Of a stretch of 64,000 nucleotides of DNA, positions 2,531 to 64,000 are shown one piece after another. The DNA comes from Takakia lepidozioides (Eukaryota > Plantae > Bryophyta), in assembly GCA_030704615.1 (NCBI GenBank), contig CM060734.1, positions 37,324,001-37,388,000 of the forward strand, given 5' to 3'. Position 1 is the stretch's first letter; every line of letters begins with the position of its first letter. Both the position numbers and the translations under genes were made by a program. The notes under the pieces were generated by a model. That model had not been told where the DNA came from. It saw only the letters and a program-made list of their open reading frames with translations, and searched no databases.

Positions 2531-2734
2531 ATTTTTGTTGGAAGCTGTTTGTAGTTGTGATATTCACAGAATCTCAAGAAAGGGCATTGAGAGTAAGAGG
2601 AGTCAATTATCCGAAGGATTAAAATATTAATTAATAGGTTTGTAAAGTTCTTTAATGAATAATTGTTTTTCCTCGAGTCATTTTTGAGAATCTGGTCTTT
2701 TCCGAAAAACAAAACGATAAAATAAAATAATTGA

Positions 2735-2895
2735 ACTACCAAAATAGTAAAGCTGTTGAACGGAAGCCGATCGAAAGGAAATAGCATATGCTCAAACAGA
2801 CGTTACAAACGTTAAGCGCGCAGTTCGCGGAATTGAACGAAGTAGTCTCGGTATGTCCCCTCGAGGCTCGAGTGTCCCTCCCAATATAAGGACCT
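2735..2895 (+). promoter_or_regulatory. Conserved proximal promoter of AP2-like copy 1 (homologues at ~8635-8770 and ~26420-26590 on -)
   Basis: Block ACCAAAATAGTAAAGCTG..GAA..GAAATAG.ATAT followed by CCAATATAAGGACCTG (TATA-like at ~2885), about 150 nt upstream of the ATG. It is conserved in all three copies while flanking AT-rich DNA diverges. Confidence 0.5.
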
Positions 2896-3039
2896 GAGCT
2901 CTGCTGTTGCAGGGATGGGCAGTCTTTTGCAGGTTGTGCATGGGCGTAGGAGTGTGGGTGCGCTTTTGGATTTTCGGTGGTGAATCTGAACTGGTTCCTG
3001 CTGCGGCCGCTCTGTACTTGTTGCCTACAAGGTGGAAGC

Positions 3040-4690
3040 ATGCCGTAAGTGATCCTAGTGCTTTCTACATGAATTGCAAGAGTACTTCAGGGACGGTTTG
3101 AGCTGTAGCTAATGTAAGCTTCTTTTTGGTTGTCTTAACAGCCCAGAAAACTCTATGTTGTAGTTGTCTCAGCTTCTCCTTCTGATAAGTATTATCGTAG
3201 TTGTGATTTCATTTTTTAGCTGATGATCGGCTGGTTAATGAGAGATGCACCTTATGTACGGTTCTAAGTTATGGCTGTCCTATTATAAGCATGTGTGCAG
3301 TCGTAAGGGAAATGTTTCTACGGCGGCGTCAACATCTAGCGGCCTGGTGGTTGACAATGTCGATCAGGCCGAGGAATCAGTCTACTATAACATTTCCCAA
3401 TACAAAACAACAAAGAAATGGGGTGCATGGTTGAGGCAAGTAATTTGTCTGATGTCTTTGCAAAATGCCCAGGAGAAAATCAGATCCTAGTACAGGATAG
3501 TCATCTAGGTCGATTATGCTGCTTGATGGATAGGTTTGGAGACTTAATGAGTGGATTTGCTGATCAGTCACACTCTCTATATATTATACACTCATTATAC
3601 ATGCTAACCAGTTGTGTATGTTTTTCTGTGTGCTGTTCGGGCTGCAGTCACGGAAACAAGCGTCATTACATTGGTAAGCTCCTTTCTTCTAAGCTTCTTT
3701 CACCAAGTTAGATCAATTTTTTTGTGAAAATGGGCCTGATATTTATATTTCTATCTATGTGTACACAAACTTCCTTTCCTTGATAGAGCTTGCCTGAATT
3801 TTAACCAATGAAATTGGTGGGGAAATACAGGATCTTGGGATGACCAAGAGCTTGCAGCAAGGTAATTACACCCTGACTTCAAGTTTCATTGGCTACAATT
3901 TTTCTTCCATCTTGACTTGGTTTACTGACCGAAGATCAGGCAAACCAGGAACCCCCAGTAACTAATTCTTTAATGCACATGTCTATCTTGCAGAGCACAG
4001 GACAGGGCAGCTCTCAAATTGAAGGGACCAGAAACCAAAACCATCTTCAATCCCCGTGATTACAAAGATGATAAAAAACTTGTAAGCTTGCACATACATT
4101 CACCCAGTTCAAGGATCAGTTTGGAATCTTCTACAGATGTATCCACCATTTGAAGCTCATGCAGTCTGCAAATCTGTAGCAAATCTAGGTAGGTGACTCC
4201 TGTGTATTGCTACTTTCGTGCAGTGGGCCATAATGGGAGACACTGCCTTTGTGGAGATGCTCGTAGGCGAGAGCAGGAACTACTATAACCCAACCCCCAA
4301 GTCCAAATGTAAGTGCATCCACATGCTTGGACCAAGAGAATCCAGTTTTACAATCTACTTAATGTATAGTCCTTTTTTATACTATAGCATGTTCTAATCC
4401 TGAAAATTCTTCTCATCCTATTGTCAGGTTTGATACGGATCCTCCAGAGAAGAAGTGAGATGGGGGCTGCCCCGGTGGACGTGGAACCTGCACCTCAAGA
4501 CTCTAAAGTGCAGGGATTGGAGATCGACCAAGACGAAGACTCAGAAAAATCTCTGGAATGTGTCATGCTGAGAGACTTCAGGAAGGGTGAGGGAGCTTCG
4601 TTCTCCTCTATCCCCCGCCGGCCCCGCACTCCACTGCATGTATGCGACCTGCCAATCTGCACTCACGTCGTCAAACCAAGCGTAGGTTAA
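3040..4690 (+). CDS. Divergent single-AP2-domain transcription-factor-like protein, copy 1 (7 exons, 210 aa)
   Basis: Hand-spliced exons 3040-3044, 3301-3435, 3648-3673 (26 nt), 3831-3861 (31 nt), 3994-4081 (88 nt), 4224-4308 (85 nt), 4428-4690. Phases join into one open frame: MPRKGN...SVYYNISQYKTTKKWGAWLSHGNKRHYIGSWDDQELAARAQDRAALKLKGPETKTIFNPRDYKDDKKL-WAIMGDTAFVEMLVGES... This aligns with the AP2 consensus (Y..WLG.F...E.AARAYDRAA.K.RG..A..NF). Intron 2 needs a GC donor at 3436. Confidence 0.88.
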
Positions 4691-6179
4691 CGCGCATCGC
4701 AGTGAATAAATTAGACCAATATTAGTTATTTGTTGGCCGTGCCTTCTTATAGGCAGGCAGGACTATTTCAGGAGTCTCCAGGTTTGAGAAATTTTCACGA
4801 AGCCATTCAATGGACAGATGCTGGATGAAGTATATGGATGAATTCAGTAAATGAAGTGTGTAGATGAAGTCTGTGGACGAAGTTCTCGGTTTTCATTCAC
4901 ATTCCCATACTGACCACAAATAGTTTCCACTTAAGACATGTGTAGATTGAATATTTCATCCATATAGATGAAATGCGTAAATAGGATGTAGTTCATCCGG
5001 TCAAGTTGGTGCATGTGGTCAAGATATACCTTGTTCAGTAATGTGCCAATTTAGGGTTCCATCCAGCACGAACGAAGGTGCCACCTAGATTAGTGTGTGG
5101 AATTTGGGATCACTTTAAAACCAGCTGCTAATTATTTATACAACAAGGCAGGGCTTCCATAATTTCCATCCATTTGTTATCTCCCTTCTTTAATTTTCTT
5201 GGGTCAATAGCATAGTTAATTAAGTTTAATCTAAGTTGTCAGGGTGTGTGTGCAGTGTATATGCGCAGAGGAATGCTTGAGGAATAACGGTCTCATTTCT
5301 CGTGTAAATATGAATGGAGGATGAATGTGGCCCACTTTGAAGATGATAGTGTAGTCTGTCCATTAATGTGTGAGGATTGCCTCTGGACACATACTGTAGA
5401 AAGGTAATTGAAAGTACAGGCACAGATAAGCACATATTAACGACAATTGGATTGAATAATCATGTGCTGGACATGACCAGTATCAGTTACTTCCCATCCA
5501 GCCAGTTACAAATGAACTCGCAATCAAAGTCAGGACAGTGACAATACGAATGCAAGTGCACATTAACATATTTGAGAAATTCTGCGACCCGGTGCATTTT
5601 TTGGAGCAATGGTAACTTCTTTGAACGTTGAGTGCCATATTCTGGAGGCGATGGGGCGAATCAAGAGTCCTTTTTATCCGTGGCTTATTTCTCTCCCTCA
5701 ATCTTCCGGAAGTCGACTCGTGCAGTAAGATGCATTCAAGACAGTTTTCTTATTACGGTACTCTTACTAACTGGTAAAATGGAACTGGTTGGAAGGCCCG
5801 CAATTGAGACTTGAGTAGCATTGAGACCATATTTGGGTAACTGCTTACCGGTTGGCGAGGACACCTAAACAATGAAGGTGTTGATAGAGGAGAGCAACTG
5901 AAAGAACGGACACGGAGATGGATAAGCCGACAGGCTGGTTTTTGTGATGGTAGTCAGGGATGAGTGACAAGCTATGACATGTACAGATGATGAATTTGAC
6001 GTTTGTCAAAGCATGGGACCTAGAGCTAGCTCTAAGGAGTTTTAATGTACTTAATGTGATAGAGTAACAGTTGATATATGTATTGGACTTTTGAGTTTAC
6101 GAACGATTCGAATGGCATAGTTATGAAACTTTTCCATAGATGCTACAGAGTGTGCACTGTGACAGAGTGTTGTTATAAA

Positions 6180-6600
6180 TGGTATCAGAGCCAAGTTAAG
6201 CAATAAAGCGGTGAAGGTTTCTTATGAGCCAACTCTCGTTTGGGTCAGAGAGTAGTTTACCCCGGCGCTTGTAGTTCCCAGCATAAGGAGTGTCAAGAAA
6301 GTCAACCTTTCTCCTTGAAGCATAAATTGAAACTTTAGGTGCTCTTATTCGTTCTGAAGCTCAAGAATTAGCATCTGGAAGGAGGAATCTACTACGACGC
6401 TACCGAGCTAGAGGTCGTTAGATGAATAGCGGAACCAAGCTAAGCTACAGTTAGATGTCAGTTCATTGGAGTTCAGGACAACAAAGATATTACTCGTGAA
6501 ATCAAATGGAGGGTGAAGCTACCGGAGTTTTTGGGTAAGTCGTCCAGCTGGCTCTCATCCAAAGTATGGAGATTCTTGAAATTTCCTTGGGCATAGATAC
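6180..6600 (+). mobile_element. Degenerate LTR-retrotransposon remnant (tRNA-Met primer-binding site plus possible gag trace)
   Basis: TGGTATCAGAGCC at 6180-6192 is the canonical tRNA-iMet PBS. Downstream GTGAAGCTACCGGAGTTT encodes a gag-like KLPEF motif. No intact ORF. Confidence 0.4.
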
Positions 6601-6905
6601 AATTCGCGGGTAGCAAGCTATATATACCTCTAATTTGGCAAAGAGACACAATGTGCTATACAGACGGAGTAGAGAAAGATTATATACGCTTTGATAGTTC
6701 CCTGATTACCTATTCTCCCCACTTCTACACTAGATGCAGCAGTCCCTTCCAGAGAATCTAACTGACTTGGTACAAATGAGATCCATCCCAATATCTCCGT
6801 GTATCTCACTCGCCCCTGCAACCAAAGAATCACTAAAATGAGTACATCTGATGTGTGAGCTGGTAAACTCAACATCATTCGTCACATAGAGACTCATATA
6901 ATAAA

Positions 6906-6997
6906 GAAATGAAATGAAATGAAATGGTGCTTTATAACGTCCGCGGAAAGCTCGTAGAGCTTATGGGACAAAATGGAAGAAAACATGAGAGAGGAAA
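6906..6997 (-). repeat. Orphan LINE-A 3' tail (further copies 15543-15584, 32946-33061, 46636-46732, 59105-59132, 61200-61302)
   Basis: Matches the LINE-A 3' end TTGTCCCATAAGCTCT...AGCTTTCCGCGGACGTTATAAAG.ACCATTTCATTTC. Confidence 0.85.
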
Positions 6998-8929
6998 ACG
7001 AAAAAATTAAACATCCGTTGGAAGCCCATCACAGATCAACAAATGAAAGTTTCCCTATCGTCTGTGGGATTCCCACAGCTTCACAGCTAGAAGCTAGAAG
7101 ACATCTTCCAGGAATGGAGAATCTCTAAGGAGACATCAGTATGGCCGCTCATACTACGTAGGCCAAGGGACAGTAAATCAATGAATCAACACAATTGAAG
7201 AACTACTCAGATCAGCTTAAGGCGAGCACAAACCTGGAGAGCTAGTAGCAACGTATTCAATTATTAGAGTCCTGGCTTAGATTTTTTCCATCTCGGTTTG
7301 TATTCATTCACTAACCATAGACAGACTCTGGATGAAAAAACTAAAATCTTATGATCTAGAGAAAAAAGAGGAACTCACCCACAAAACGTCGATCCTTCAG
7401 AGAGAGAAAAAATAGTTAGCCTGGAGATGAGAAAGAGACGTGCGAAGTTCGACAGGAGGGTGGCCGCAGCCACCGCCTAGGCTTTTGCGGGCAATTGATC
7501 CAGACCGTAGTTTGCTCAGATTTTAATGTTATCCTACGGTCACGAGATTCCTCAGGGTATCCTATTTTGGGAATCCTCTCTTTACTGTTCTAAAATAGAC
7601 ATTATTTCGAATTGTAAGTGATTTTTGAGACCCTTTAGTTAAATATTTGCTTTTTACTTTTGTTGGAAGACAGTGGTAAGTTTGTAGTTGTGATCTTCAT
7701 AGAATCTGGAAGAAAAAGTTGGAAAGGGGATTGATACTAATAAGAGAGACTCAGTAATCATGATTTATTATCGTAATTAGAATATTTTGTATCAATATTA
7801 AATAGTTAAAAAAAATCCCCTTGGGCTTGTATTTTAAAGTTAAAAAACAAACTGGTGTTCAATCATTTTATAAATCTGGGTCATGGGCCGGTGTCCCCTT
7901 CATCAGCCTCCACTGTGGCATGATATGTAAGGTTACTTTCAGTGTTGCACAGATATTTGAGCCTCACCCCCCCCCCCCCCCTTGGGAGCCCAACCTGGAA
8001 CCTGGATATGTATATGTAGATCTACCCGAGGTCAAAAAATCAAATATCCACCTCCATTAAGAACAGCCAGATATGAAGAGATGGGATAACCGAAATCCGG
8101 TTGAGAACCGGTGGTTTTTTATTTTTTTTATTTGATTTGAACTAGAACTAGTGGTCCAAAAGAAGCAGGTTATGAACTATGAACCCATATATCCGGCATT
8201 TAAAACCTGATGTTATAATCAGGATAATAGCTGGTTATTAGGGTCACTCCACATAAACTAGACAGGTGCACATATTTATAACGTCATGTTCTATGATGCA
8301 CTCCCATTTTCTGAGATTTGAATCGACACTTGCATTTTCTGTATTATCTACACTAGAAGATTTCCGAAGAGCACTTTTCTATGTTCTACCCAATAATTGT
8401 AATTACTTTTTTATTAGTATTCTGCTAAGAAAAACAGGATTTGGGTGTGTGGATCAATTATTCCCAAGCTCCCATGTCTTTCCCGTACATCATTAGTTGC
8501 CTAACGGCTTCATCGAGGTTATTTTTTCCTCGTCAATGGACTTTGGTCCCCTTCAATCCTTTAAAATAAATAAATAAATAAATAAAATCTTGTGTTTTCC
8601 AAAAAAACAAACAATAAAAAACAGAATAATGGAAGTACCAAAATAGTAAAGCTGTAGAACGGAGAACCTGTCGAACGGAAATAGCATATTCTCGAACGCA
8701 CGTTACGAACGGAGTTCTCGGGAGTGAACGCAGTTGGCTCGGGCATATCAGCGTGCCTCCCAATATAAGGACCTGCGCTGCTCTTGCAGCGATGTGCAGT
8801 CTTTCGCAGTCTTGTGCGCGCGCGCGTTGGGTTGTGAGTGCAGGATTGTGAGTGCGCTTTGGGTTCGTGGTGACTCTGAACGGGCTCCTGCTGCTGCTGC
8901 TCTGTACTTGTTGCCTACAAGGTTGAAGC

Positions 8930-10624
8930 ATGGCGCCGTAAGTGATCCTAGTGCTTGCTACGGCCTGTAATTGCAGGAGTACTGCAGGGAAAAAGGTTTT
9001 AAGCTGCAGTTAATGTAGTCTTGGTTTTTGGTCGTCTTAACAGCTCAAAAAACTCTATGTTGTTGGTTGTCTCAGCTTCTTCTTCTGGAGGATCAATATT
9101 ACCGTAGTTGTGATTTCGTAGTACCATGAGGATCAACTGATGATGGGCACCTTCTGTACAATTCTTCTTCGATAAGTTATGGCTATTCTATTATGAGCAT
9201 GTGTGCAGTCGCGGCAAACTAAGGCTTTCTAAGGCGTCAACATCTAGCGGCCTCGTGGATGGTGCTGTCGATCAGGCCTCCACGAAATCAGCCTACAAAA
9301 ACATCAGCCAATTCAAAAACTCAAAGAAATGGGGTGCATGGCTAAGGCAAGTAATTTGTTTTGATGTCTTCGCAAAATGCCTAGGAAAAAATCATGAGAT
9401 CCTAGTATATGATAGTCATCTAGCTCAATTAAGTTGCTTGATGAATAAGTTTGCAGACTTAATGAGTGGATCTTCTGATCAGTCACACTCTCCTGCACCA
9501 TCTATATTACACGCTAACCAGTTGTTTATCTTTTCCTGTTGTGCTGTTCGGGCTGCAGTCACGGGGGCAAACGTTTTTACATGGGTGAGCTCCTTTGAGC
9601 TCCTTTCCTTTAAGTTTCTTCTTACCACTAAGTTACATCAATGTTTTGCGAGAATGGGCCAGAGTTTTATATTTTAAACTATGTACATACTCATTTTCTC
9701 TGACAGATCTGGCTCAAGTTTAAACAATGAATTTTGTGGGGAAATGTAGGTTCGTGGGTTGATGAGGAGCTTGCGGTAAGGTAATTACACCCTCACTTTT
9801 AACTTTTCCTTGGCCCCAAATTTTCTTGACTTGGTGTACTGGCCCAAGAGGCAAACCCCCAGTAGCTAATCCTTTAGTGCACATGTCTATCTTGCAGAGC
9901 ACAGGACAGGGCAACTCTCAAATTGAAGGGACCAGAAGCCAAAACCATCTTCAATCCCAGTGATTACGAAGATGATAAAAAACTTGTAAGCTTGCACATA
10001 CATTCACCCAGTTGGATCAGTTTGTCCAGAATCTTCTACATTACATTTGCAGCTCATGCAGTCAAATCTACAGGTAGCAAATCTAAGTAGCTGACTCTTG
10101 TGTATATTTGAAAATTTCGTGCAGTGGCCCACAATGGGAGACACTGCTTTTGTGGATATGCTTAAAGGCGAGAGCAGGAATTGCTACAAGCCAACCCCCA
10201 AATCCAAATGTAAGTGCATCCACATCCTTGGACCAGAAGAATGCAGTTTGATCATCTATAATGCTGAGTCTTTTGTATATAGCATGTTGTAATCCTGAAA
10301 ATTCTTCTCATCCTATTGTCAGGTATGATACGTATCCTCGAGAGAAGAAGTGACATGGAGGACGCCCCCATGGCACCAAACGATCAGCTAGTCGAAACTG
10401 AACCTCAGGATCTGGAACGTTCACTGCAGGGGTCTGAGAGAGTGAGGCTCGACCAAGACGAGGACTCAGAAAGCTCTCTGGAATGTGACTATCTGCGAGA
10501 ATTCAGGGAGAGCGAGGGAGAGAACGAGGACTCAGAAAGCTCTCTGGAAACTGTCTATCTGCGAGAATGGGCAAGATTGGGCGAGAATTCAGGGAGAGTG
10601 AGGGAGAGAATTAGCCCGTATTAA
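8930..10624 (+). CDS. Divergent single-AP2-domain protein, copy 2 (7 exons, 225 aa)
   Basis: Exons 8930-8937, 9209-9346, 9559-9584 (26), 9750-9780 (31), 9898-9985 (88), 10125-10209 (85), 10323-10624. Open frame MAPRGK...SAYKNISQFKNSKKWGAWLSHGGKRFYMGSWVDEELAVRAQDRATLKLKGPEAKTIFNPSDYEDDKKL. GC donor at 9347. Confidence 0.86.
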
Positions 10625-11665
10625 AGGACTCTCAGCCTCCAAGGCTTCGGATGACATTGAGAAGTTCGAAGAAGAAGTTACCATGGTCGCTCCACTCTGG
10701 GCAGCTGCATTTGCCAGTCGAAGGAGTTGACAAGACTAAGAGGCAGTAGCTTTCAGCTCGCCCTTCGCCCTCGCTGCGACCTGCCACGTTAGTTCAGAGA
10801 ATCGCAGGGAATAATTAATGCGTCGGATGACCATTATCGCCGGTTAATAATTGTTACCCAGAGTTAATTAAGTTGAAGCTTTGTCAGCCAAACACTGATC
10901 AGTGTGTACACTGTGTGCACAGTGACCTAATGAGGAATACTTCTACTCCTTGATCAGGGAATAAGGCTCCCGAGTCCCCTTGCGACTTTCTCCCGTAATC
11001 CTTTGTACATATCAACTTTCCTGTAACCCTCTGTACAAATGAAAGTACTTGTGCAAAATTTTGAAAGGTCTGTCTTGTCTGTCTGAAACTTTTGTTCCAA
11101 TTTTGTTGCAAGCGACACGTGGACTTCATCGTCTCAATTATGCCCACCAAAGCCTGAACAAATGAATGTTGCCCAAATTTGAAGATAGTGCCTGCAGTCT
11201 GTCCATTAATGCGACTCGGATGTGTTGGGTTTGCCATAGCTGGAGCCTGGACCAATATTGTAGAAATGGACTAATGAGAGAATGTAGTCATGAGTTGTTT
11301 GGCGTAGCCTTGTGGCCACATAGACTTTGTGCCCAGTTTGGTCGGAATAAGAGGGAGGGAGGGAGAAAGATAGATTTCCATATCCGGTCCCCAACTGGGA
11401 TAACAGCCTGTTACAAATGAACTCACACCAGTAAACAATGAAAAGCTGACCAACTTTAGTTGTAATATCTAGACGGCTACAGTACAGATGTTGATGAGTA
11501 CTTCGCACATTCAAAGTCCAGATTGAGAAAAATTCTCTGGGCTCCAAACTACAGATTGAGCAGCTAATGTAACCCTGAGCCATAGTTTCTCAGTATCTCT
11601 CTCTCGATGGAAGTTCAAAGGGCATAGAATAAATGCAGAAAGAGTGTGGGAGGAGACTGATAGAT

Positions 11666-14600
11666 CTAAGATTTCCTCTTAGCCCCAAAGTGTTCAATCA
11701 AGAGCTCTTGTACAACTGGCAGAAGATTTGTGGCAGGAACACTACTACTGACAATGTCCCCCAAGTGAGAGTCAGACCCCACTCTCCCACCAAGAAAGAT
11801 GTCAAATCCTTCCACTGGCTTCTTGTTTTCGTCACGGGCCATAGTACCCATGAACCCAATGTCAGCCACCTGCATAAGAATATTATTCAGCGTCGTTCAG
11901 TTCGAATTCACTGCAAGACCTAAAGTACCAGAAGATCATAAAATTTCATAGTATTTTGATGGACATCATGGAAGTGGTAGAGGAAATGTAAGACTTTGCT
12001 TGAACCAAGTGGACCCGGAAAAACCAAGCCTCATTTTGACAGGAATCACCGACCAGACTTTTCTTCAACAGAGTTTCTGTATATCACTCACTTGGCTTAA
12101 CCTAGCCTAATCACCTATACACCAAACCTGCCTTTGCAATTGCATGAGAAGCAGCACTCGATCGTATGTCCATGTCTTCATACTCTCTAATTTCTTCTAT
12201 CCTGTGCAAGACCTGTAAACTCCCTTTCCAGCAAACGATTTAAAACCAATGTGGGCATAAGTACAGACCTGAACTTGGGCACAACTATTGGGACACCCTG
12301 TGAAGTGCATTCGTACTGGCCGAGACAGCTCCATTGTCTCTTCAAGATCCTTAGTGAGCTGCAGCGAGCGGGCCTTAGTCTCTACTATTGCCATCCCACA
12401 AAATTGACTCCCAGTGCAAGCCACCAAATTGGCCAATAAAGGAGTTGGGTTCGTAGAAAACTTCGCTAAGATAGGCTCTTGGAGCAAAGATGAAACCTTC
12501 TCAGTTGATACATTGGGAAGTATCAAATTTTGCTCAACCGTTATCCGGAGTTCACCTGTCCCATAATCATCCGCAAGGCGTGCGAGCTCATACATTTCGG
12601 GTGCCTGGAGGCGGCCAACCGGGACATGGATACCCACAAAATTCAATCCTGGTTGCTTTTGAGGGTGCACTCCATAGAAGTCCCGCCGCTTCCAAGCAGG
12701 GTCAACCAAATCCTTTCCAGCTCTTTGAAGGGGAGTTCCTGTGGACATCCGTTTCTCCACTTCGGTTCTGAACTCTTCAATTCCCTGTATTGCAATTCAG
12801 AGGTAATCAGTCTGTCTCTTTCAGTAACGTATTTAATGGGAAATTTCAAAAGAATGTAGTTGTATAGTGTCTATGATTATGCCCAAGAGCCGATTCTGCA
12901 TCGAAGATGCAAATACACATCCTACTGAGGCAAGCCAAGAAGGGAGAATCAGAGGTAGATTAGCAGTGCTGAGCCATTGGCACTACAGAGTTGAAGCCAC
13001 ACCATCTAAAAAATTCAAGCTACCTCACCATTCACCATTCACAATCTGGAAGGGGTGACAGTCATTCACCCAACACAATTAGAATAATTGCAAGAAATCA
13101 ATCCATCTCAATTAAAGTGAACAAGCCTGCTAAAATCTTACCAGCTCATCAATCAACCACATCATGCGAGTTTTTTGTCGGTTACCCCGTGACCCCAGAT
13201 CCCTATATGCCTCAAGCACGGCTTTACAAAGAGGAACAACATCCCTCTCCGGAACCCAAGCATCCATCTTCACGGCCTCAGCACAGCGCTTGGGGCTGAA
13301 GAACCCCCCCACCAGCAGATTGAATCCAAATTCTCCATCTTTTGTTGCAGGTATGTAAGCAAGGTCATTTATATGGGGATGCTCGTATAGGTCATGACTC
13401 CCCACCACGCACACATTCCACTTGCGAGGCCTGCAACAAGCATCCACATGTTAGCACTCTTAAAAGTGCACATAGAGGTGCCCAAGAGAAGTGGGAACAC
13501 AGTTCTAGGTATGTACATCACATAGCTCTTTCATTTGCCACAAATCCTGACTGAATCCCCTGTAATCCATTTGACTGGAGCTGTGGAATATTGGATTTGT
13601 GTCTCATTACCCTGGTGAGCTATAACCAAAAGATGGCTAGTTTGCTGTGAGCACTATGCCTCAAGAGTACATCATACTGGACATCATAGCCAACTTTTGA
13701 GGGGGGAACATCATAAGGTACCTAGAAGTCTAGTGATATAAAAACCCAATGCCACACCAGTCAAAAGAACATTTCTGTTTGGCAAATGGAGATGTGATTC
13801 AATCTCAACATTCTTACAGATTAAATGTGCATCTCTCCATGAGTAGAATGAGGATATATACTGCTAAGAAAAGCACCCTCTTGCACCACCTGTCTCTTCT
13901 CAAAGGGAGCTGAGGCACTCTGATCTCTAATCCTGATTAAAATCCGTAGTAGAAGTAAGTACTGCATCTACAAAACAGACATCTCTCAAAGGCTACAATC
14001 TGTACAGTGGAGGCAGAAAGACGTACAAATTGGTGATGGACGTGTTGCCACGTCCACTGCTGATGACATAGTCTGTGATTGCCTGACAATATGGTCTTGT
14101 GTCAACGATCTCGTCAGGGTCAATACCCGCAAGTGGATTCCCGACTGCATTTCTCACATTATCCATCCCACTCTGTAGGCTTGAGAGACCGACCCTCCGA
14201 AGCCCATCGAATATTGCAGGTGCGTCTTCAAGTGTAACCCCCCGGATTTGCCAATTTTGTCTCGTGGTCAAGTCCGCACACCCATCTTCTCCATACTTTT
14301 CGATGACACTTGCTAGGTAGCGTGTATGTTCACTTGTTGTTACCCCGTTGGGCAGCTTCAGCCGCATCATGAACCTCCCATCTGCTCACACATCTCATTT
14401 CACATGTGTTGTTGAACCCAGCTCTGTGTCTTAAAACAGGAACAACAACCACTAGCCGAGCTCTAATTATTCGACATGTAGGCAACCATCTGTCTCAAAG
14501 TTGACTGCCTGTCAAATGCAATCATGGTTGATCGCCACAAGGAAATCACAAGTGGAGTTACTTACACTGACGCTTTCGGCGGTGGAATAATCCCAGCCAT

Positions 14601-15228
14601 TTGAGACGCGAGTCGATGTCATCCTTGCCAGATTTTGAATTGTCGATTTCAGCAAATGGGATCTTGGCGAGCTGCTCGATCTCATTCTCAACAAAAAACT
14701 TCATTGGATCCTTCTCTAACTTTATCTGCATGCAGTATAACTGCCACAATCAGACCTGAATAAATGTCATTCCAGCTACAACCATCGCGAGGACTAATTG
14801 TCCTCCACACACACATACCTACACTTTCTCTCTTTTGCAGTTCAACCACAATTTGACTTGACAAAAACCTTTTCAGCAGAATTGATGCCAGTCCGGAATT
14901 CCTCTCGCAAAACCCAGTACCCATCTTTCTCCTCAACTCTTGGTATCAATCGATCATTCTCGACAGTCGCTGATGGTACGCTGGCGATGGTTCGCGCTGT
15001 CACTTGCCGGGGGGTCGACTCAAGTCGGAGGGCGGAAGCACAACATACGGTGCGATCACTGTTGCAAGGCCTCAATTTTGTAGATGGGTTTGTAGAACAC
15101 TTCTTGAGAGAGATGTACTTGAGACCCGAGAATTCGGAGGAGTGGGGGTCATGTGTGCCAACATTCCAGTGTACATGTGTCTCCAAGACTCCATGGTTTC
15201 CCAATTGGAGCTGAACTGTGCCTTGCAT
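11666..15228 (-). CDS. NIR1: Ferredoxin-nitrite reductase, chloroplastic (6 exons)
   Basis: Exons 15228-14869, 14725-14566, 14381-14027, 13430-13142, 12784-12269, 11869-11666, all GT-AG. Motifs RLKWLGLFHRRK, MMRLKLPNG, TTRQNWQIRG, SGMDNVRN, sirohaem/4Fe-4S cysteines ACTGSQFC and TGCPNSC, and an N-terminal transit-peptide-like region. Confidence 0.96.
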
Positions 15229-16323
15229 CCTTCCTTCCTTGTCTCTCTCGCTCAACAAGATATGAGGCCAGTGATAGCCGGAAATTCTTCCTCCTCTCTT
15301 TGGTACCTACCGATCAACGCAATCTACAACGGAAACTAACTAACGCTTTGGTGTGGATCTCAGGGCCCGTTCTACAATCTCTCTCCTTCTCACACTCCCA
15401 CATACGTCAATTCAATATCTTGCCAACAACACCATCCCATTCCTGCACAATCCTCATTAACAGAGCTCACATAATTGCTCCGCCATCTATAAACGCAGCC
15501 AAGCTTGTCGCCCACACTTCACCATTCTCTGAGTCTGTCTTTCAGCTTTCCGCGGACGTTATAAAGTAGCATTTCATTTCATTTGTCTGCGCGACGCGGC
15601 GGCGTGGAGCTTGCCTTGCCACGACCCCTCAGTTCAGCTTGCTCAGCTCGCCACGTCCAAGCCCAAGTGGATTTTGTCTTTATGTATTTTAGTAAGAAGA
15701 TGACCCTTTACAGAAAGTCTCTCGAGTCTCAATCTAGATTCCATTGTCTGCCCCGTTCCCCCACCCTCTGGATGATGGAGCCCACGCATGTACTGCTCCA
15801 GAAGCAGCAGCAGCAGCGGCTACCGGCAGCCGCCTCCTACTTGTCCTTTGGTTGTAGAGAGATTGTTAAGAAAGAGTCGGGGCATTTGAGCCTCCTCATC
15901 GAGACGGGTTTGAGGGACTCGAGTGCTAGCAACATTGCAACGACTGGGGGACCCAGGGAGCATCTCATGTGAAGTTGAAAGGTGCTCTAAATCCTGCTCA
16001 GCGAGCTTGAGCCTGTCGTGGAAACCTAGTTTTACAAGCTGTCCGCTTGCGTCCACTTCTTCAGACTTTACTTGCATTGTAGTGAGAAGCTAAGGTTGAA
16101 CTATGTTAGATCTTTGCACTAACAAATGGGAAGTGCTTGAACCTTGCCATATCTGTCTCTCTGTCTCTCTCCATCTGTGTGGCTCTATGGCCGCAAGGCT
16201 AACAACGTCTTGCGAGTAGGTTGCGAGGAGGTTGGGTATCGTTCGAGCATACGAGCACCCAATGTAAGCATGCTCACACAAGCAAACAAGAATGTTTATA
16301 GACTTTCGAAATATCCTGAGAAT

Positions 16324-16373
16324 ATGGCCACAAGGCTGTGGCAAACATCTTATGAGTACATTCTCTCTCTCTC
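16324..16373 (+). repeat. Orphan LINE-B 3' tail (further copies 11277-11365 on -, 24000-24088, 54617-54701, 54794-54842, 58950-59025)
   Basis: Matches the tail of the element at 34324-35246: CAAACTGGG...GCCACAAGGCT...CAAACAAC.TCTTATGAGTACATTCTCT. Confidence 0.8.
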
Positions 16374-16677
16374 ATATGCTGTGCTTCTTGAGATTTACCT
16401 CGGATGCAATTTGACTTATTTCATCCATGTAGAGTCCTGAAGAGGAGGTTCTTAGTAGGTTCTCGTTCCATTCCTAATTCAAGTTCGTATGACGAATATT
16501 CCCACAACTAATTCGATAGCTATGAGATGTCCATGATACAAGGATAAGTAGTCGGGCACAAAAAGATTGCCATCAACTGCAAACAAAACTAGCTCTACAG
16601 AGGATAGCTCTACACATCCAGATTGTCGACCTTTGTCACAAGATGCAATTAATAGAATCAGAAGTCAATGGGAGTAG

Positions 16678-19600: not shown

Positions 19601-20791
19601 GAAGAAATATCCGCGGGTGCCCGCCTGAGCCCATAAAGTGCCTCAGCGAATGATGCATCTGGAATAAAATTGAACCCCTGTTAGAATTTTTGGGCCCTTG
19701 GTAAGAATCAAGAGCACAGTAACGACAAACTACAATCAATGCGAGTATGGCCATGCTACTTCAAGAATAACATGTTAGCGTAGGTGGGTCAAGAAGCTTT
19801 TCAAATCAGTGGAAACACAGACCTAGCCAAGCTGCGCTTCTGTTTCTCCCATCCAAAAAGCTGATTAACACTGCCTTATATATTCTTAGAAGGGAGTGGA
19901 AGAAAGAGGATGAGAGGGAAGCCACGACAGACCTGCAGTGCGCAGGCTATGCAGCTCCAAAAGCAGCATGAGGAGGGAGTAAGCTTCCTCGCTGTGATCC
20001 AATACTCTATGCAGAATAGGCCTCCGCTGAGCCATCACCTAAAAAACCATAACCCAAACCTCTTCAAGACATTGCGACATCTCTCTCGAGAACTCATTCC
20101 ATGCCCCAACTGCTAAAGTCATTGTCCCGAACCTAAAACCTTACCCAATTTATAGAACCCTGAAGAAAACAGTTCAGCCAGATTTTTACTTCAATGGGAG
20201 CGTGGAGCAGTTCATCTGAAAGAAGACACAGGTTCCCTGGAAAATAGCCTAAGGAACCTCCAGTAATTTTGTGCCTAAGTCGATTCCACCCCATCACTGG
20301 CGGTTCAACTGCAGTCACTGTCAACTAATGCAAAACTAGATCTACCAATCCTCCCCATTTGTGTCCGACGAAGCAGAACACCCTAAAAATTTTCAGGAAA
20401 TTTTGAAACCATGGCGATCCCTTGACTGGAAATTAAACAGCCGCTCGTGATTGAATCGATTACACAGAGATAAAACCCTTTAGAGCTTGAAATCAGTGTC
20501 GGCATCACAGGCAAAAAAAACCCTAACAAACTTATCTCACGATAGTGCAAGATGCCGTTGCCAGGGAGCTCCAACAGTAGACAAGAAGGACTGACAAATC
20601 CTCCAATTGTGAGAGTGAACCTCCAAGTAGAAGTCGACAGAAAAACAATACTTTTGGAAAGTGGAATGGCAAGAGTGACGAACCCCAAGCGAATACATCA
20701 GGGCAGCACGCAGGCTGGTGGGTAGATGCTGGGCTGCTGACATTTCAAAGAAGGTGGGGCGGCTGCCCTCACCCCCTACTTGCATCAACAT
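16678..20791 (-). CDS. PEX12: Peroxisome biogenesis RING protein PEX12 (multi-exon)
   Basis: N-terminus MLMQVGGEGSRPTFFEMSAAQHLPTSLRAALMYSL; internal LPYLKSKL and MVEWWYQSAE..PPPPPPPP; RING exon 17125-16988 (ICPLC..RTNPA...SGFVFCYPC); last exon YKRCPVTLAPAGTNQLRRLYHDA* ends at 16678. Confidence 0.93.
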
Positions 20792-20957
20792 CTTTCCCAA
20801 GTAATCTCTCTCTCTCTCCCTCAATCCCTCCTTTACTCTCCTCTCTCGTTCTAAGAACAGACGATTTTTCCTGGAACCTCGTCTCTCACAGTAATCCTGC
20901 AACACGAGAGAGAATTGCTTGCGCCGAAGCCATGAGGAGATGAAAGACTCTCCATCA

Positions 20958-21205
20958 GGTATGATGGATGGACAGAAGAGGATGAATAACGTTGGGGCTT
21001 GTGGATGAATGTCTCGAGCAGATATGATGGATGGACAGAAGAGGATGCATAACGTTGGGGATTGTGGATGGATGTCTCGAGCAGATATGATGGATGGACA
21101 GAAGAGGATGGATAACGTTGGGGCCTGTGGATGGATGTCTCGAGCAGATATGATGGATGGACAGAAGAGGATGGATAACGTTGGGGCCTGTGGATGGATG
21201 GATGT
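20958..21205. repeat. 63-bp minisatellite, about 4 copies
   Basis: Unit GCAGATATGATGGATGGACAGAAGAGGATGGATAACGTTGGGGCCTGTGGATGGATGTCTCGA recurs at 21018, 21081 and 21144, with a further partial unit from ~20958. Confidence 0.95.
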
Positions 21206-21398
21206 CGTCCAAGCGGTCGTCTCTGCCGGCCTGGAAACCCTAGAAACAGGGAAGAAGAAGATGCTGCAGACAAGGGAAGAGGAGGGAGGTCGTTTAGGGT
21301 TTGTACGTCTTTAATGTTGCAGTGATTCAGCGGGCAAGCTCAGACCTTACGAAGTGGCCGTGCTCAGTTTTCTTCGTCTTTCTTCGATTTAGTCTGCC

Positions 21399-23523
21399 AT
21401 GCATGTAGGGAATGGGGTCAGAAGGAACGGGAAGAATGATAGAGAGCTCGAGTTTGCAGGAGAGGTGGCGCCAAACGACGACCGGACGGCAGACCCATTG
21501 GCGCAATTGAAAGCTGATGGTATGGGAAACTGGCTCCTTTTCGAACGTATGTGGTTAGGAAATGTTAAGTCTCATGTGCGGGTGGTTGATTTTGTGTCGG
21601 CATATGCTCTAGGGTATTGAGCTTACTTTTTTATTGGTGGCAAGCTTCGCTTGAGATGTCTTGGATTAATCAAAAGAAGAACTTGATTTGTAACGGCTTC
21701 ATGCCGAACTAGCCTCGTGGAGCAACTTCCGCTGCGGGACTGGCCGTCTCGAATGTCCTTGCACGGATTGTTTCTACTTTGCAGGATCAGAGTCTGGCTT
21801 AATTGATCTCTCCAAGTGGTTCAACCGTTATCTAGGATCAATTCATGTTTTACTAGTTGTTGTAGTTGGTGATGGAAACTTCCCAGCATGTAGCACCTGC
21901 CCCGGTTAGGTTGGCCTTGGCAACTGATGATCACAAGGGTGGTCTGATAAAGCTTCTGTGTTGACACGGGAGTTATTGGTTAGAGAGATACTGTGTAGTG
22001 CCTGGTCAGGCGTCACACCTTTTGCAGACCTTTTACAGATTTTAATTGTGTAAGGCTGATTTTTTTTGGGGGAAGGGCAGCAAAAAGGGCCAAGATAAAT
22101 GCCATTTGGGAGCAGCTCAATGCCAAGAATCCAACACTTACCGCCAAGGCTGGCCGCAGCCATGTGCAGGCCCCTACAAGCAGGTCGAAGCCAGCTAAAG
22201 TTATCCCTGTAAGTTGAACCGTCTGTCCCTCTCTCTTGAGCACAGGAGGTTCTTGGGCTTTGCAGGCACACTTGCTCATGAATAGTTTCAGTTGGCAACT
22301 ATGGCTGAAGGGTCTAGGATGTATAGGCTGCACATGTGAATGCGTGTGTTTAGTTTTTTGAAATTCGCACCCAGCAGTCAGAAAGAATGATGATGACATT
22401 CGCAGCTACGTACTGAGATGATTTGAGAATGGACCTGCTACACAGGTTTTGTTCACTCAATAATAACATATCCATGCTGTGCTGAGATATTCTCGTCTTG
22501 ATTTGTGCAGGGATGGATGGTGAGTTTAGGCATAGCTCCATCAAAGACAACATCCAGTGCCAAGCCACCAGCAGGGAACCAGGTCACTGGTACTGAAGTT
22601 TCAATAAGCAATGCAGCAAGCACATGGAGCAGGGAAGATACTAAGCTTGAAACTGCGGGTGTCGAACGAGAAGGGGAAAAGGAGGATGCCCGAAAGATTG
22701 CAGCTGCCGCTCTGGCAGCAGCCAAGGCAGCAGCAGTGGCAGTAAGCACTGAAGGAAAGGTTGAGGTAAGAGATGTCAGCTGCTATATGAAAGAGGCATA
22801 ATCAGTTCCCGCACATATTTCAACACAGCCTTCTACCTGCTTATGCCACTCGTGTCAACCTGTGCACATGCCCTACGCTTTTAATGTGGAGGCTCTGTTC
22901 CCAATGCTCACTGTCCCCGCGACCTTGTGAATGCATTGGAAAGTAGGTGGAAACCTGACCAAATTTCATGTGGAAGTAGCTAAAATAGATACCCCTGGAG
23001 TGTCCAACAGTAAGAGCATTGGCATGTGCCTTCTTCTTTTATGGATCAATGGATTGTGGCTGGTAAGTAATAGTCATGACCTTTTAAATGGTACCCAGTC
23101 ATGCCTTCTAGTTTTCTGATCTCTCTGGTCTTATTGTGTCTATGGCAGATCAGTGAGGTTCGTGAATTTGCAGGGGAAGACATACAGATTACAAAATATG
23201 TGGACCCTAACTCCAAGGCAGCACAGGCCTCTAGGCGGAAGGCAGAAATGCAAGCTTCGTCCTCCTCGGGTCTGGACGCGTTACTGGAGCAGATTAGTAA
23301 GAAACAGAAGTTAAATATCTTAGATAAATCTAGAAAGGATTGGGGGGAATTCAAAGAAGAGAAAGGGATTGATGTGGAGCTTGAGGCGTATAAGAAGAGT
23401 GGAGATAAGTACTTGGATAAAGTTGCATTTTTACAGCGAGCTGATGTACGGGAATATGAGAAAGAGAGGGATGCCCGGCTAGCACTGCAGTCTAAGCGCC
23501 GGGACTCGACCCTCATGGATTGA
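21399..23523 (+). CDS. SWC5: SWR1-complex protein 5 / CFDP1 (BCNT-C domain) homologue
   Basis: Exons ~21399-21519 (start uncertain), 22081-22208 (AKRAKINAIWEQLN), 22511-22765, 23149-23523. The last exon encodes BCNT-C: EVREFAGE...GLDALLEQI.KKQKLNILDKSRKDWGEFKEEKGI..EL...KSGDKYLDKVAFLQRAD.REYEKER. Confidence 0.88.
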
Positions 23524-24581
23524 TTAGCTGTGGATTTTACTTGTCTTCAGAAAATTTACTGCATAAGAAAAGAAGTTCACAACTCCTAGATGCCCTCACG
23601 GTCACCCTGTATGCTTGCCATAGCTTCATTTGTCATTCTGTCATACAGAAAAAGAGATTAGACTTGACTGGCAAATGAAAATAGAGAGTGAATGGGTGCA
23701 ACTGTGTAACATTATCCCAGACCGATGGGATATCCCGGATGTATATCTGGCTTAATAGATGAGTGCCAAATTGTTTCAGGCGGGAGTTCAATAAAGATCA
23801 CTCGCAAATTGTGACATACCTGTCTCATTTCTGTCTATTGGTAAGAGTGTGTTCACAGTTGCTTGGATGGAGTTCGGTTATCACAAGCAAAGAAAATCGG
23901 GAGATTGCAGAGTGTGCGAGTTCATTTGTAACAGGCTGTTATCCCAGTTGGCGAGCTGATACTTATGGCAATCTATCTTTTATGGCAATCTATCTCCGTC
24001 CCTCCCTCCCTCTTGTTCCGACCAAACTGGGCACAAAGTCTATGTTGCCACAGGGCTACGGCAAACAACTCATGACTACATTCTCTCATTAGTTTTAATC
24101 ACATTTCTACAATGTCTGTCCAAACTTCAGCTCTGGCAAACCCGACACATCCTCACACATTACTGGACAGACTTCAAATTTGGCCCACATTCATTTCTTC
24201 AGGCTTTGGTGGGCATAATTGAGTCAATGAAGAGTCGCTTGCAACAAAATTGGAACAAAATTTTCAGACACCCAAAAGTTGCAGACAGGTCTTTCAAAAT
24301 TTTGCACAAGTTTCAGAAGGGTCACAGGAAAGTTGATTTGTACAACGGATTACGGGAGAAAGTGGGTTCGCAAGGGAAGCCAAATTCCCTTGGAAGTTGA
24401 GGACTCATTAAGTCACTGTGTAAGTATGTTGTGCACACACTGATTAGTGTCTAGCTCACTAACTCTTAATTAACTCTGGCTAATGGCCCAAGAAAATTAT
24501 GAACCGATACTGGCTATCCAAACTCACTGCCATGCTCGCGACGCACATTCAACTGCTGCAATGCTGCTAACCGACGCTTCG

Positions 24582-26261
24582 TCAGTATAACTTGACAACA
24601 TGAGTGCAGATTGGCAGGTCGCATACATGCACGGGAGTGCGGGGCCGGCGGGGGATATAACCTCCCTGCTTCTTCCACTCTCTCAGATATCTACCTTCTA
24701 TAGAGGTGTCTGATTCGTAGTCTTCGTCGAGCCTCACTTTCTCCAATCCCTTCAATCCCTGCACTGCACATTCCAGATCCTGAGGTGCAGGTTCGACTGA
24801 CTGAACCCATCCCTGCACAGCTTGAAATTCCAGATTTTGAGGTGCAGGTTCGACTGGCTGAACCCATCCCTGCATTACTGGGCCTTCCAGATTTTGAGGT
24901 GCAACGGCGACTGGCTGAAGGTTTGGTACCACCGGCGCGGCCCCCATCTCACTTCTTCTCTCCAAGATACGCATCAAACCTGACAATTGGATGAGACGAA
25001 TCCTCAGGATTACAACATCCTATATACCAAAGGACGGACATTATAGATTATCAAACTGCATTCTTCTGGTCCAAGGATTTGGATGTACTTACATTCTGAC
25101 TTGGGGGTTGGCTTGTAGCAGTCCCTGCTCTCGCCTACAAGCATATCCAGGAAGGCCTGATCTCCCATTGTGGGCCACTGCACGAAATTTCCAAATATAC
25201 GAAAGAGTCAGCCTACTTAGACTTGCTAAAGATCTAACTGTATGAGCTGCAAATCCTCCATAGAACTGAAAATCCTCCAAACTGATCCAGCTGGGTGAAT
25301 ATATGTGTAAACTTACGAGTTCTCTATCATCCTTGTAATCACGGCGGTTGAAGATGGTTTTGGCTTTTGGTCCCTTCAATTTGAGGGCTGCCCTGTCCTG
25401 TGCTCTGCAAGATAGAATGTGCACTAAACATGATTAGCAGCTAATGAGGGTTTGCCTATTCCGTCAGTACACCAAATCAAGAAAAAATGTAGCCACTTTC
25501 TCAGTACCTCCCGAGCCAATCTCTCGTAGTTTCTAGGCATTAAGTGCTCAGGGTGTATTACCTTGCTGCAAGTTCCTCGTCCTCCCAAGCTCCTGCATTT
25601 TTCCACAAAACTCACTGGTTAAAATCCAAGCAAGATCGATCAGGAAAATAAATCCTCCATAGATTAAAATTTAGAAATCTGGCCCATCTTCCCAAAACAT
25701 TGATCTAACTTAGTGGTAACAGAAGCTTAGCGGGAAGGAGCTCACCGATATAAAGACGCTTGTCCTTATGACTGCAGCCAGAAACAGCACAATGGGAAAA
25801 GATAAAGAACTGGTTAGCATGTGTATATGGAGAGTGTGACTGATCAGTACATCCACTCATTACGTATGCCGACTTACTCATTCAGCAACTTAATGGAGCT
25901 AGATGACTATCATAGACAAGGATCTAATTCTCTTCTAAGCATTTTTCAAAGATATCAAACAAATCACTTGCATTACTTACCTAAACCATGAACCCCATTT
26001 CTTTGAGTTTTTGAATTGGCTAATGTTTTTGTAGGTTGATGTCTTGGCCTTCTCCACATCACCATCGCTCGTTGACGGCTTAGAAACTCTTACTTTGCGT
26101 CTGCACACATGCTCATAATAGAGCAGCCACAATTCGCTACGGTACTCTTGCAATTAGAGGACCCAAGAGAAGACCACAATAACTGCAGCACAAACCTTTC
26201 TCCCTGCACTAGTGCTCCTGAAATTAGAGGGAGAAAGCACTAGGATCACTTACGGCGCCAT
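24582..26261 (-). CDS. Divergent single-AP2-domain protein, copy 3 (7 exons, 251 aa)
   Basis: Exons 26261-26254, 26100-25981, 25771-25746 (26), 25592-25562 (31), 25404-25317 (88), 25177-25093 (85), 24979-24582, all GT-AG. Frame MAPRKV...STYKNISQFKNSKKWGSWFSHKDKRLYIGAWEDEELAARAQDRAALKLKGPKAKTIFNRRDYKDDREL. Confidence 0.88.

Positions 26262-58465: not shown

Positions 58466-64000
<5,535 letters not shown>

What the first reader, a model, noticed from the sequence alone, without database searches (positions are those of the whole stretch)
3040..26261. Hidden three-member family of highly divergent, micro-exon-encoded single-AP2-domain genes
Seen: three 7-exon genes (3040-4690 +, 8930-10624 +, 24582-26261 -) whose exon phases join into uninterrupted 210/225/251-aa frames despite substantial divergence. 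They are invisible in the ORF track. Established knowledge (from memory): 26-, 31- and 88-nt exons spanning AP2 repeat 1 are the signature of euAP2 (APETALA2/TOE) genes. Seen: the usual motifs are changed in all copies - YRG to YKN/YYN, WE(S/A) to WG(A/S)W, YLG-F to Y(I/M)G-W, RAYD to RAQD, terminal NF to IF - and there is only one AP2 repeat, followed by an acidic tail. Inference: a lineage-specific, locally amplifying euAP2-derived family with altered DNA specificity or a dominant-negative/microProtein-like role. This is the best candidate here for an undescribed system.
Basis: partly seen in the sequence, partly recalled or inferred. Interest (0 to 1): 0.9.

Follow-up and report, generated by a model that had tools for sequence, protein, structure and literature searches.

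The report
Cryptic APETALA2-like gene trio in moss
Three neighbouring genes in what is probably the moss Takakia keep the exon layout of the flowering-plant regulator APETALA2, a gene line reported as missing from mosses and liverworts, but they have lost the second DNA-binding repeat and rewritten the first; they are under selection, yet I could not show that they are expressed or what they bind.

Summary
Confirmed: three 7-exon genes give open frames of 210, 225 and 251 aa. Exons 3-5 (26/31/88 nt, phases 2-1-2-0) match fern and angiosperm euAP2 genes exactly. Exons 2, 5 and 6 fit euAP2 repeat 1 plus linker best at the expected ungapped position; the two micro-exons do so in 4 of 6 cases. An exon-5 profile retrieved 40 euAP2 repeat-1 proteins and no ANT/WRI.

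The copies are constrained (core dN/dS 0.43, p=0.002), but copy A's branch is near 1. Repeat 2, the EAR motifs, the euAP2 NLS and the miR172 site are absent, so these are euAP2-derived, not members in the strict sense.

Two same-species RNA assemblies splice the neighbouring nitrite reductase gene but hold no contig of the three genes; one unspliced contig suggests a fourth paralog.

The host is probably Takakia (inferred). A 2021 survey found no euAP2 outside vascular plants. The domain tree is unresolved, Marchantia MpAP2L4-6 could not be compared, and the microProtein idea is unsupported. First-stage notes list other diverged AP2 genes in this genome, none followed up.

The parts
3040..4690 (+). 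Copy A, 7 exons, 210 aa; its branch has dN/dS about 1
8930..10624 (+). Copy B, 7 exons, 225 aa; tail has a 45-nt and a 30-nt internal repeat and lacks the C-terminal motif shared by A and C
24582..26261 (-). Copy C, 7 exons, 251 aa; tail has three in-frame 57-nt repeats
3648..3673 (+). 26-nt micro-exon of A (B 9559-9584; C 25746-25771), equivalent to euAP2 micro-exon R1M2
3831..3861 (+). 31-nt micro-exon of A (B 9750-9780; C 25562-25592), equivalent to euAP2 micro-exon R1M3
3994..4081 (+). 88-nt exon of A (B 9898-9985; C 25317-25404): AP2 helix and start of linker, 15-18 of 29 residues identical to Ceratopteris AP2
4224..4308 (+). 85-nt exon 6 of A (B 10125-10209; C 25093-25177): euAP2 linker; ends at the codon where euAP2 repeat 2 has the Gly of YRG
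4309..4427 (+). Intron 6 of A (B 10210-10322; C 24980-25092); its read-through weakly resembles the start of euAP2 repeat 2, a possible relic of the lost repeat
   Evidence: shuffle P 0.004, 0.018, 0.094; copies not independent
2689..3039 (+). Conserved promoter and 5' leader of A with a TATA-like element at about 2884 (B 8586-8929; C 26262-26627)
   Evidence: function inferred
23808..23916 (.). Left member of a ~110-nt direct repeat (82% identical) flanking the unit that carries copy C
28082..28193 (.). Right member of the direct repeat flanking the copy C unit

Best explanation
A small, locally duplicated family of fast-evolving transcription-factor genes descended from a euAP2-type ancestor in a bryophyte (probably Takakia). 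Shown: each gene has the euAP2 intron layout across repeat 1, encodes repeat 1 plus the linker, lacks repeat 2 and the EAR/miR172 control elements, was copied as DNA with promoter and introns, and has been kept open and under moderate purifying selection. Inferred: repeat 2 was lost when a splice donor arose at the Gly codon of its YRG motif and joined the linker to a new, freely evolving tail. The domain most likely still folds (core aromatic, Gly and Ala positions kept) and still binds DNA (net charge of the beta-sheet region +5 to +6 against +3 in fern AP2), but all four arginines of strands 1-2 are gone, mostly to lysine, so it should read a different or looser sequence than euAP2. With an acidic patch and no repression motif it would act as an activator or a neutral occupier rather than a repressor, in a restricted stage not represented in the two RNA assemblies, most plausibly sporophyte or reproductive tissue.
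For: Exon lengths and phases identical to Ceratopteris AP2 and to most of 80 metagenome euAP2 loci (26 nt in 73, 31 nt in 78, 88 nt in 71). Exons 2, 5, 6 place best, ungapped, at the expected euAP2 position in all three copies (P 0.0006 or less); micro-exons in 4 of 6 cases. Exon-5 profile: 40 of 48 hits are euAP2 repeat 1, top named ones from ferns, none ANT/WRI. Core dN/dS 0.43, LRT p=0.002; no frameshift, stop or lost splice site over about 0.4 substitutions per site. Fern AP2 is expressed in sporangia (PMC8136505) and MpAP2L5 is up in young sporophytes (PMC6174852).
Against: No contig of A, B or C in two same-species RNA assemblies, even at 80% likeness. Copy A's branch has dN/dS 1.0, although not significantly different from one ratio. 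Pfam and PDB do not recognise single exons. The domain tree leaves the family on a 2.5-substitution branch in an unresolved fork, with no ANT, WRI, RAV or bryophyte rows. Strand 2 and exon 4 resemble generic AP2/RAV-type domains (WGA, acidic run) more than euAP2 repeat 1. Folding, DNA binding, activation and the stage of expression are all untested.
Confidence: 0.55

Rival explanations
1. Formerly functional duplicates now silent or decaying: selection acted during much of their history but the genes (A above all) are no longer expressed and are drifting.
For: No transcript contig in two assemblies; exons 3-6 differ at about the same rate per site as introns; branch A dN/dS 1.0; tails change by repeats and a probable frame change in B.
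Against: All three frames, 18 splice junctions and the promoters are intact; neutral survival about 5e-9 or less; dN/dS 0.29 and 0.33 on B and C; stage-restricted transcription factors are often missing from small bulk assemblies.
Confidence: 0.2
2. The genes are functional but descend from an older stem lineage of the AP2 subfamily (or are orthologs of Marchantia MpAP2L3-7) that shares the introns with euAP2 by ancestry, so they say nothing new about euAP2 proper and belong to an already catalogued bryophyte group.
For: Tree places them outside the euAP2 repeat-1 clade (93/91) in an open fork; generic AP2 character of exons 2 and 4; Marchantia has a tandem trio MpAP2L4/5/6 plus MpAP2L3 and 7; other diverged AP2 genes are noted in this genome.
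Against: Exon 5 and the linker match euAP2 in length and sequence without gaps; the 26+31 nt pair is described as specific to one AP2 type and distinct from the 9-nt ANT/WRI type (PMC7714060); long-branch artefacts can pull a derived group out of its clade.
Confidence: 0.15
3. Dominant-negative or microProtein-like inhibitors that no longer bind DNA and act by titrating partners of a full-length AP2 factor.
For: Loss of repeat 2 and of several invariant DNA-contact and packing residues (YRG Gly to Asn, AYD Tyr to Gln); best conservation is in the helix and linker exon.
Against: Proteins are 210-251 aa; the basic surface is kept or increased; no EAR motif; AP2 domains generally bind DNA as monomers (own knowledge); no canonical euAP2 target is known in bryophytes (PMC8136505).
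Confidence: 0.07
4. An intron-containing euAP2 gene acquired horizontally from a vascular plant and then rapidly diverged and duplicated.
For: Nearest named hits are fern euAP2; no bryophyte relative turned up in two metagenome scans.
Against: Composition and intron sizes are like the flanks; plant-to-plant transfer into free-living bryophytes is rare (own knowledge); the scans looked at only about 500 pattern matches each.
Confidence: 0.03

Closest known systems
euAP2 lineage (APETALA2/TOE3; Ceratopteris KAH6556860.1, Anemia APETALA2 QRN75494.1)
   Same: Four intron positions and phases across repeat 1 (26/31/88 nt); same domain and linker length; 15-18 of 29 identities in the 88-nt exon; no 10-aa ANT insertion.
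   Different: No repeat 2, EAR motifs, euAP2 NLS or miR172 site; short N-terminus; YRG, WES, YLGGF, AYD and NF motifs all changed; host is probably a bryophyte.
TOE2 / SMZ / SNZ and similar angiosperm euAP2 genes with one typical repeat (PMC5029118; loci L038, L082, L095)
   Same: Repeat 1 and linker kept, repeat 2 decayed.
   Different: Those keep a canonical repeat 1, the miR172 site and repressor function; in L038 the 146-nt exon is still in place. Here repeat 1 itself is rewritten and the exon is cut to 85 nt: an independent loss.
Marchantia MpAP2L4/5/6 (Mapoly0144s0031-33) and MpAP2L3/7
   Same: Bryophyte AP2-like genes, three with consecutive gene numbers; MpAP2L5 is up in 13-day sporophytes (PMC6174852).
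   Different: Sequences and intron maps could not be fetched, so homology is unknown.
ANT/PLT and WRI lineages (AtWRI1, PDB 7WQ5)
   Same: AP2 repeat followed by a helical linker; acidic run after the YxG motif.
   Different: No 10-aa insertion, no 9-nt VYL micro-exon, different intron map, one repeat only.
RAV (AtTEM1, PDB 7ET4)
   Same: YK start, WGA in strand 2, acidic run before the helix, VDML-like helix after the domain (compared by eye).
   Different: No B3 domain; strand 1-2 spacing and the post-domain segment follow euAP2 without gaps; euAP2 introns.

Membership tests
AP2/ERF superfamily | Homology to the AP2 domain | tested here: met
   Exon-5 profile retrieves AP2 proteins; exons 2, 5, 6 align in register to euAP2 in all copies
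AP2/ERF superfamily | Pfam PF00847 hit above the gathering score | tested here: inconclusive
   Single exons give no hit but are too short; the joined search was left out by operator rule
euAP2 | 26-, 31- and 88-nt exons in phases 2-1-2-0 across repeat 1 | tested here: met
   PMC7714060
euAP2 | No 10-aa insertion in repeat 1 | tested here: met
   Ungapped fit to euAP2; WRI1 needs the insertion
euAP2 | Linker after repeat 1 | tested here: met
   Exon 6 best placement at the linker in all copies, P 0.0006 or less, though only 4-6 of 28 identities
euAP2 | Second AP2 repeat | tested here: not met
   No repeat 2 in the models; at most a weak relic in intron 6
euAP2 | EAR motifs (DLNxxP, LxLxL) and basic NLS before repeat 1 | tested here: not met
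   Absent from tails and from the N-termini
euAP2 | miR172 target site | tested here: not met
Lycophyte euAP2 genes also lack it
euAP2 | Phylogenetic placement in the euAP2 clade | tested here: inconclusive
   Long branch in an open fork; nearest rows by path are euAP2 repeat 1; key lineages missing
ANT/WRI | 10-aa insertion in repeat 1 and 9-nt VYL micro-exon | tested here: not met
RAV | B3 domain after the AP2 domain | tested here: not met
   Last exon of A has no Pfam hit, that of C no Atlas hit; tails are short and low in complexity
Soloist (At4g13040-like) | Sequence and intron map of the Soloist domain | not tested
   No Soloist sequence was available from the tools; none recognised among the 48 hits
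microProtein | Small protein with an interaction domain only, inhibiting a full-length relative | not testable with these tools
   Length 210-251 aa and a retained basic surface argue against; inhibition needs an assay
Marchantia MpAP2L3-7 group | Orthology by sequence and intron map | not testable with these tools
   Only gene names were found

The most novel reading that the evidence does not exclude
These genes are surviving, heavily remodelled bryophyte descendants of the euAP2 lineage. [quoted passage not shown]
Probability: 0.45. Interest if true: 0.72.

Novelty: new variant of a known kind. Interest (0 to 1): 0.55.

Why it matters
euAP2 genes control sporangium, ovule, seed and flower development, and a dedicated survey recovered none outside vascular plants (PMC8136505). 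A bryophyte gene family with the euAP2 intron signature gives a direct way to test whether the lineage is as old as land plants: search bryophyte genomes by intron map rather than by BLAST. It also offers three natural variants of an AP2 domain with nearly every signature residue changed, useful for learning how AP2 DNA specificity evolves. If the genes prove silent or equal to catalogued MpAP2L genes, the finding shrinks to an annotation gap.

Tried and rejected
Blank searches: Pfam on single exons; word-indexed homolog search with exon 2; PDB with exon 5, its profile and exon 6; Atlas with exon 5 (only a 0.79 lead to an AP2 cluster) and with the tail; metagenome scan with family-only patterns. 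The wider scan returned only canonical euAP2 loci. No microsynteny: BCNT loci from Marchantia and from JGI metagenome contigs carry no AP2, nitrite reductase or Pex12 match within 10 kb. The Takakia genome paper is not held; a 2026 ERF preprint that samples Takakia deals with ERF groups, and the passages read do not mention the AP2 subfamily. Rejected: chance frames; retrocopies (introns and promoters are copied); a contaminant contig (B's flank runs into the RNA-supported nitrite reductase region); ANT/WRI or RAV membership. A liverwort host was my first reading; I now favour Takakia. Left out by operator rule: any database search, Pfam scan or structure prediction of the joined proteins.
Full report
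Observation. The three genes are there as described. Models built from window coordinates give 7 exons each and open frames of 210, 225 and 251 aa, with exons 3-6 of 26, 31, 88 and 85 nt in every copy and phases 2-2-1-2-0-1. All introns are GT-AG except intron 2 of A and B, which is GC-AG. Self-comparison finds exactly three copies in the window, 72-77% identical with gaps over promoter, exons and introns. The tail is strongly acidic only in B; A and C share just an acidic patch.

Method note. Joined models were built only inside scripts from window coordinates, for the frame check, dN/dS and one domain tree.

What the domain is. Single exons are too short for Pfam or PDB. A profile of the three exon-5 peptides against 1.84 billion proteins gave 48 hits at E up to 0.001. 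Forty are euAP2 repeat 1, one euAP2 repeat 2, five algal-type AP2 proteins, one a grass multi-AP2 protein and one a spurious zinc-finger repeat; none has the ANT/WRI insertion. These E-values add up two repeats and overstate the single-domain score. The top named hits are fern euAP2 proteins. The Ceratopteris gene has exons of 26, 31, 88 and 146 nt with phases 2, 1, 2, 0 before them and at the same residues as here, and most of 80 further euAP2 loci agree. PMC7714060 describes the 26+31 nt pair as one AP2 type and the 9-nt micro-exon as the other. Scored separately, exons 2, 5 and 6 of all copies place best, without gaps, at the expected position of a euAP2 block (P 0.0006 or less); the micro-exons do so in 4 of 6 cases. 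So each gene encodes euAP2-type repeat 1 plus linker.

Loss of repeat 2. Exon 6 starts like the 146-nt euAP2 exon but ends after 85 nt, inside the codon that is the Gly of repeat 2's YRG motif. Reading on into intron 6 stays open for 27-29 codons and weakly resembles the next euAP2 residues (P 0.004, 0.018, 0.094; copies not independent). I infer that a new donor cut repeat 2 off; this is suggestive only. EAR motifs, the euAP2 NLS and a miR172 site are absent. Loss of repeat 2 has precedents in TOE2, SMZ and SNZ (PMC5029118) and in loci L038, L082 and L095, but there repeat 1 is canonical.

Selection. Per site, exons 3-6 differ about as much as introns, which alone would suggest drift. But introns have 43 indel events in 1011 columns and exons 3-6 none. 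A codon model gives dN/dS 0.43 for the 108-codon core (LRT 9.4, p=0.002), 0.47 for the domain and 0.86 for the N-terminus. Under neutrality the chance of no stop is 0.004, of keeping the splice sites 0.0007, and of no frameshift 0.002 or less. Branch values are 1.0 for A, 0.29 for B and 0.33 for C, not significantly different from one ratio. The family is therefore constrained but fast-evolving, and A may be relaxed.

How the copies arose. The shared unit includes upstream DNA, promoter and introns, so these are DNA-level duplications. The unit with C is inverted and lies between 110-nt direct repeats that are 82% identical (23808-23916, 28082-28193); the left one ends where similarity to B's downstream flank ends. 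That flank (to 11428) overlaps transcribed sequence at the 3' end of the nitrite reductase gene (11341-11644). I infer that C was copied from the B position and inserted with a long target duplication.

Expression. Two runs hold the stretch. They splice four nitrite reductase introns and are over 99% identical to the window, so they are RNA assemblies of the same species. Neither lays a contig on B's exons 1-5 at 80% likeness, which should also have caught the 88-nt exons of A and C. One 242-nt, depth-3.9 contig spans the end of exon 6, intron 6 and the start of exon 7 unspliced, at about 90% identity, and matches none of the three copies: a probable fourth paralog, as pre-mRNA or DNA. Contigs show presence, not absence, and the tissues are unknown. 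Only the B region could be laid.

Host. The neighbouring BCNT exon is closest to JGI metagenome contigs (85%; I recall these samples as peat moss, not tool-verified) and to Marchantia (80%), and groups weakly with them (82/80), outside the fern clade. The scan covers 5085 windows of 64 kb, about 325 Mb, the size given for Takakia lepidozioides (PMC13120521); another agent guessed the same, others a liverwort. A bryophyte host is likely, Takakia is my best guess; neither is proven.

Mechanism. Positions that build the AP2 core are kept or conservatively changed, so the fold is probably retained (inference). In the beta-sheet region fern AP2 has four arginines and net charge +3; the copies have one arginine, four to six lysines and net +5 to +6 (counted). 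From known AP2-DNA structures, arginines and tryptophans of this sheet read the bases (own knowledge), so I expect DNA binding with a different or looser specificity. With an acidic patch and no EAR motif the proteins would not repress as euAP2 does. A restricted, probably sporophytic or reproductive, expression would fit the blank RNA result, fern AP2 expression in sporangia and MpAP2L5, but this is analogy.

Comparison and novelty. It works like a single-repeat AP2-subfamily factor and descends, by intron map and linker, from a euAP2-type gene, but it fails several euAP2 defining features and is not filed as a member. The domain tree cannot place it: a 2.5-substitution branch in an open fork, with ANT, WRI, RAV, Soloist and bryophyte rows unavailable. 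Some residues look more like generic AP2 or RAV domains, so a stem-lineage origin remains open. PMC8136505 recovered no euAP2 from non-vascular plants; this is where the finding could matter. Against novelty, Marchantia has a catalogued trio MpAP2L4-6 that I could not compare, and first-stage notes list other diverged AP2 genes in this genome, unchecked.

Verdict. Real, selected, euAP2-derived genes in a probable moss: a new variant of a known kind, not a new system. Interest 0.55; 0.72 if they prove to be the missing bryophyte euAP2 lineage (probability about 0.45).

Noticed in passing
window 11341-14800 (-): Ferredoxin-nitrite reductase gene; four introns confirmed by RNA contigs. Its 3' end faces copy B.
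   Followed up: partly
window 21393-23523 (+) and about 20537-20905 (-): BCNT/SWC5 gene, used to place the host, and the 5' part of a Pex12-like gene (recognised from memory) head to head with it.
   Followed up: partly
window 29846 to about 60000 (-): Large multi-exon senataxin/SEN1-like helicase gene (recognised from motifs, not tested).
   Followed up: no
window 36218-38599 (+) and 43964-44883: LINE-like reverse transcriptase ORF of 793 aa inside the helicase gene, with a 95% identical 3' partial copy: recent activity.
   Followed up: no
window 6908-6996, 15538-15584, 32945-33030, 38608-38697, 44790-44888, 46640-46737, 61197-61311: Dispersed ~85-nt repeat that also forms the 3' end of the LINE copies; possibly truncated LINE ends or a SINE tail.
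   Followed up: no
window 6180-6197: Sequence like an initiator-Met tRNA primer-binding site between copies A and B, suggesting a decayed LTR retroelement.
   Followed up: no
window 4430-4462, 10325-10357, 24945-24977: The first 11 residues of exon 7 fit the euAP2 linker helix better than exon 6 does (P 0.0004-0.0016, noticed after the fact): a second linker-like helix, conserved in all copies, unexplained.
   Followed up: partly
window 10199-10354, run X2 record 7: Unspliced contig about 90% identical to B and matching neither A nor C: probable fourth paralog elsewhere in the genome.
   Followed up: partly
window 3011-3032, 8901-8922, 26269-26290: A stretch of about 25 nt just before the start codon is identical in all three copies and contains a short inverted repeat; could be a leader element or a splice acceptor, which would make exon 1 an internal micro-exon.
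   Followed up: no
window 20939-21200: Tandem array of about four 63-65 nt units between the Pex12-like and BCNT genes.
   Followed up: no
   Followed up: no
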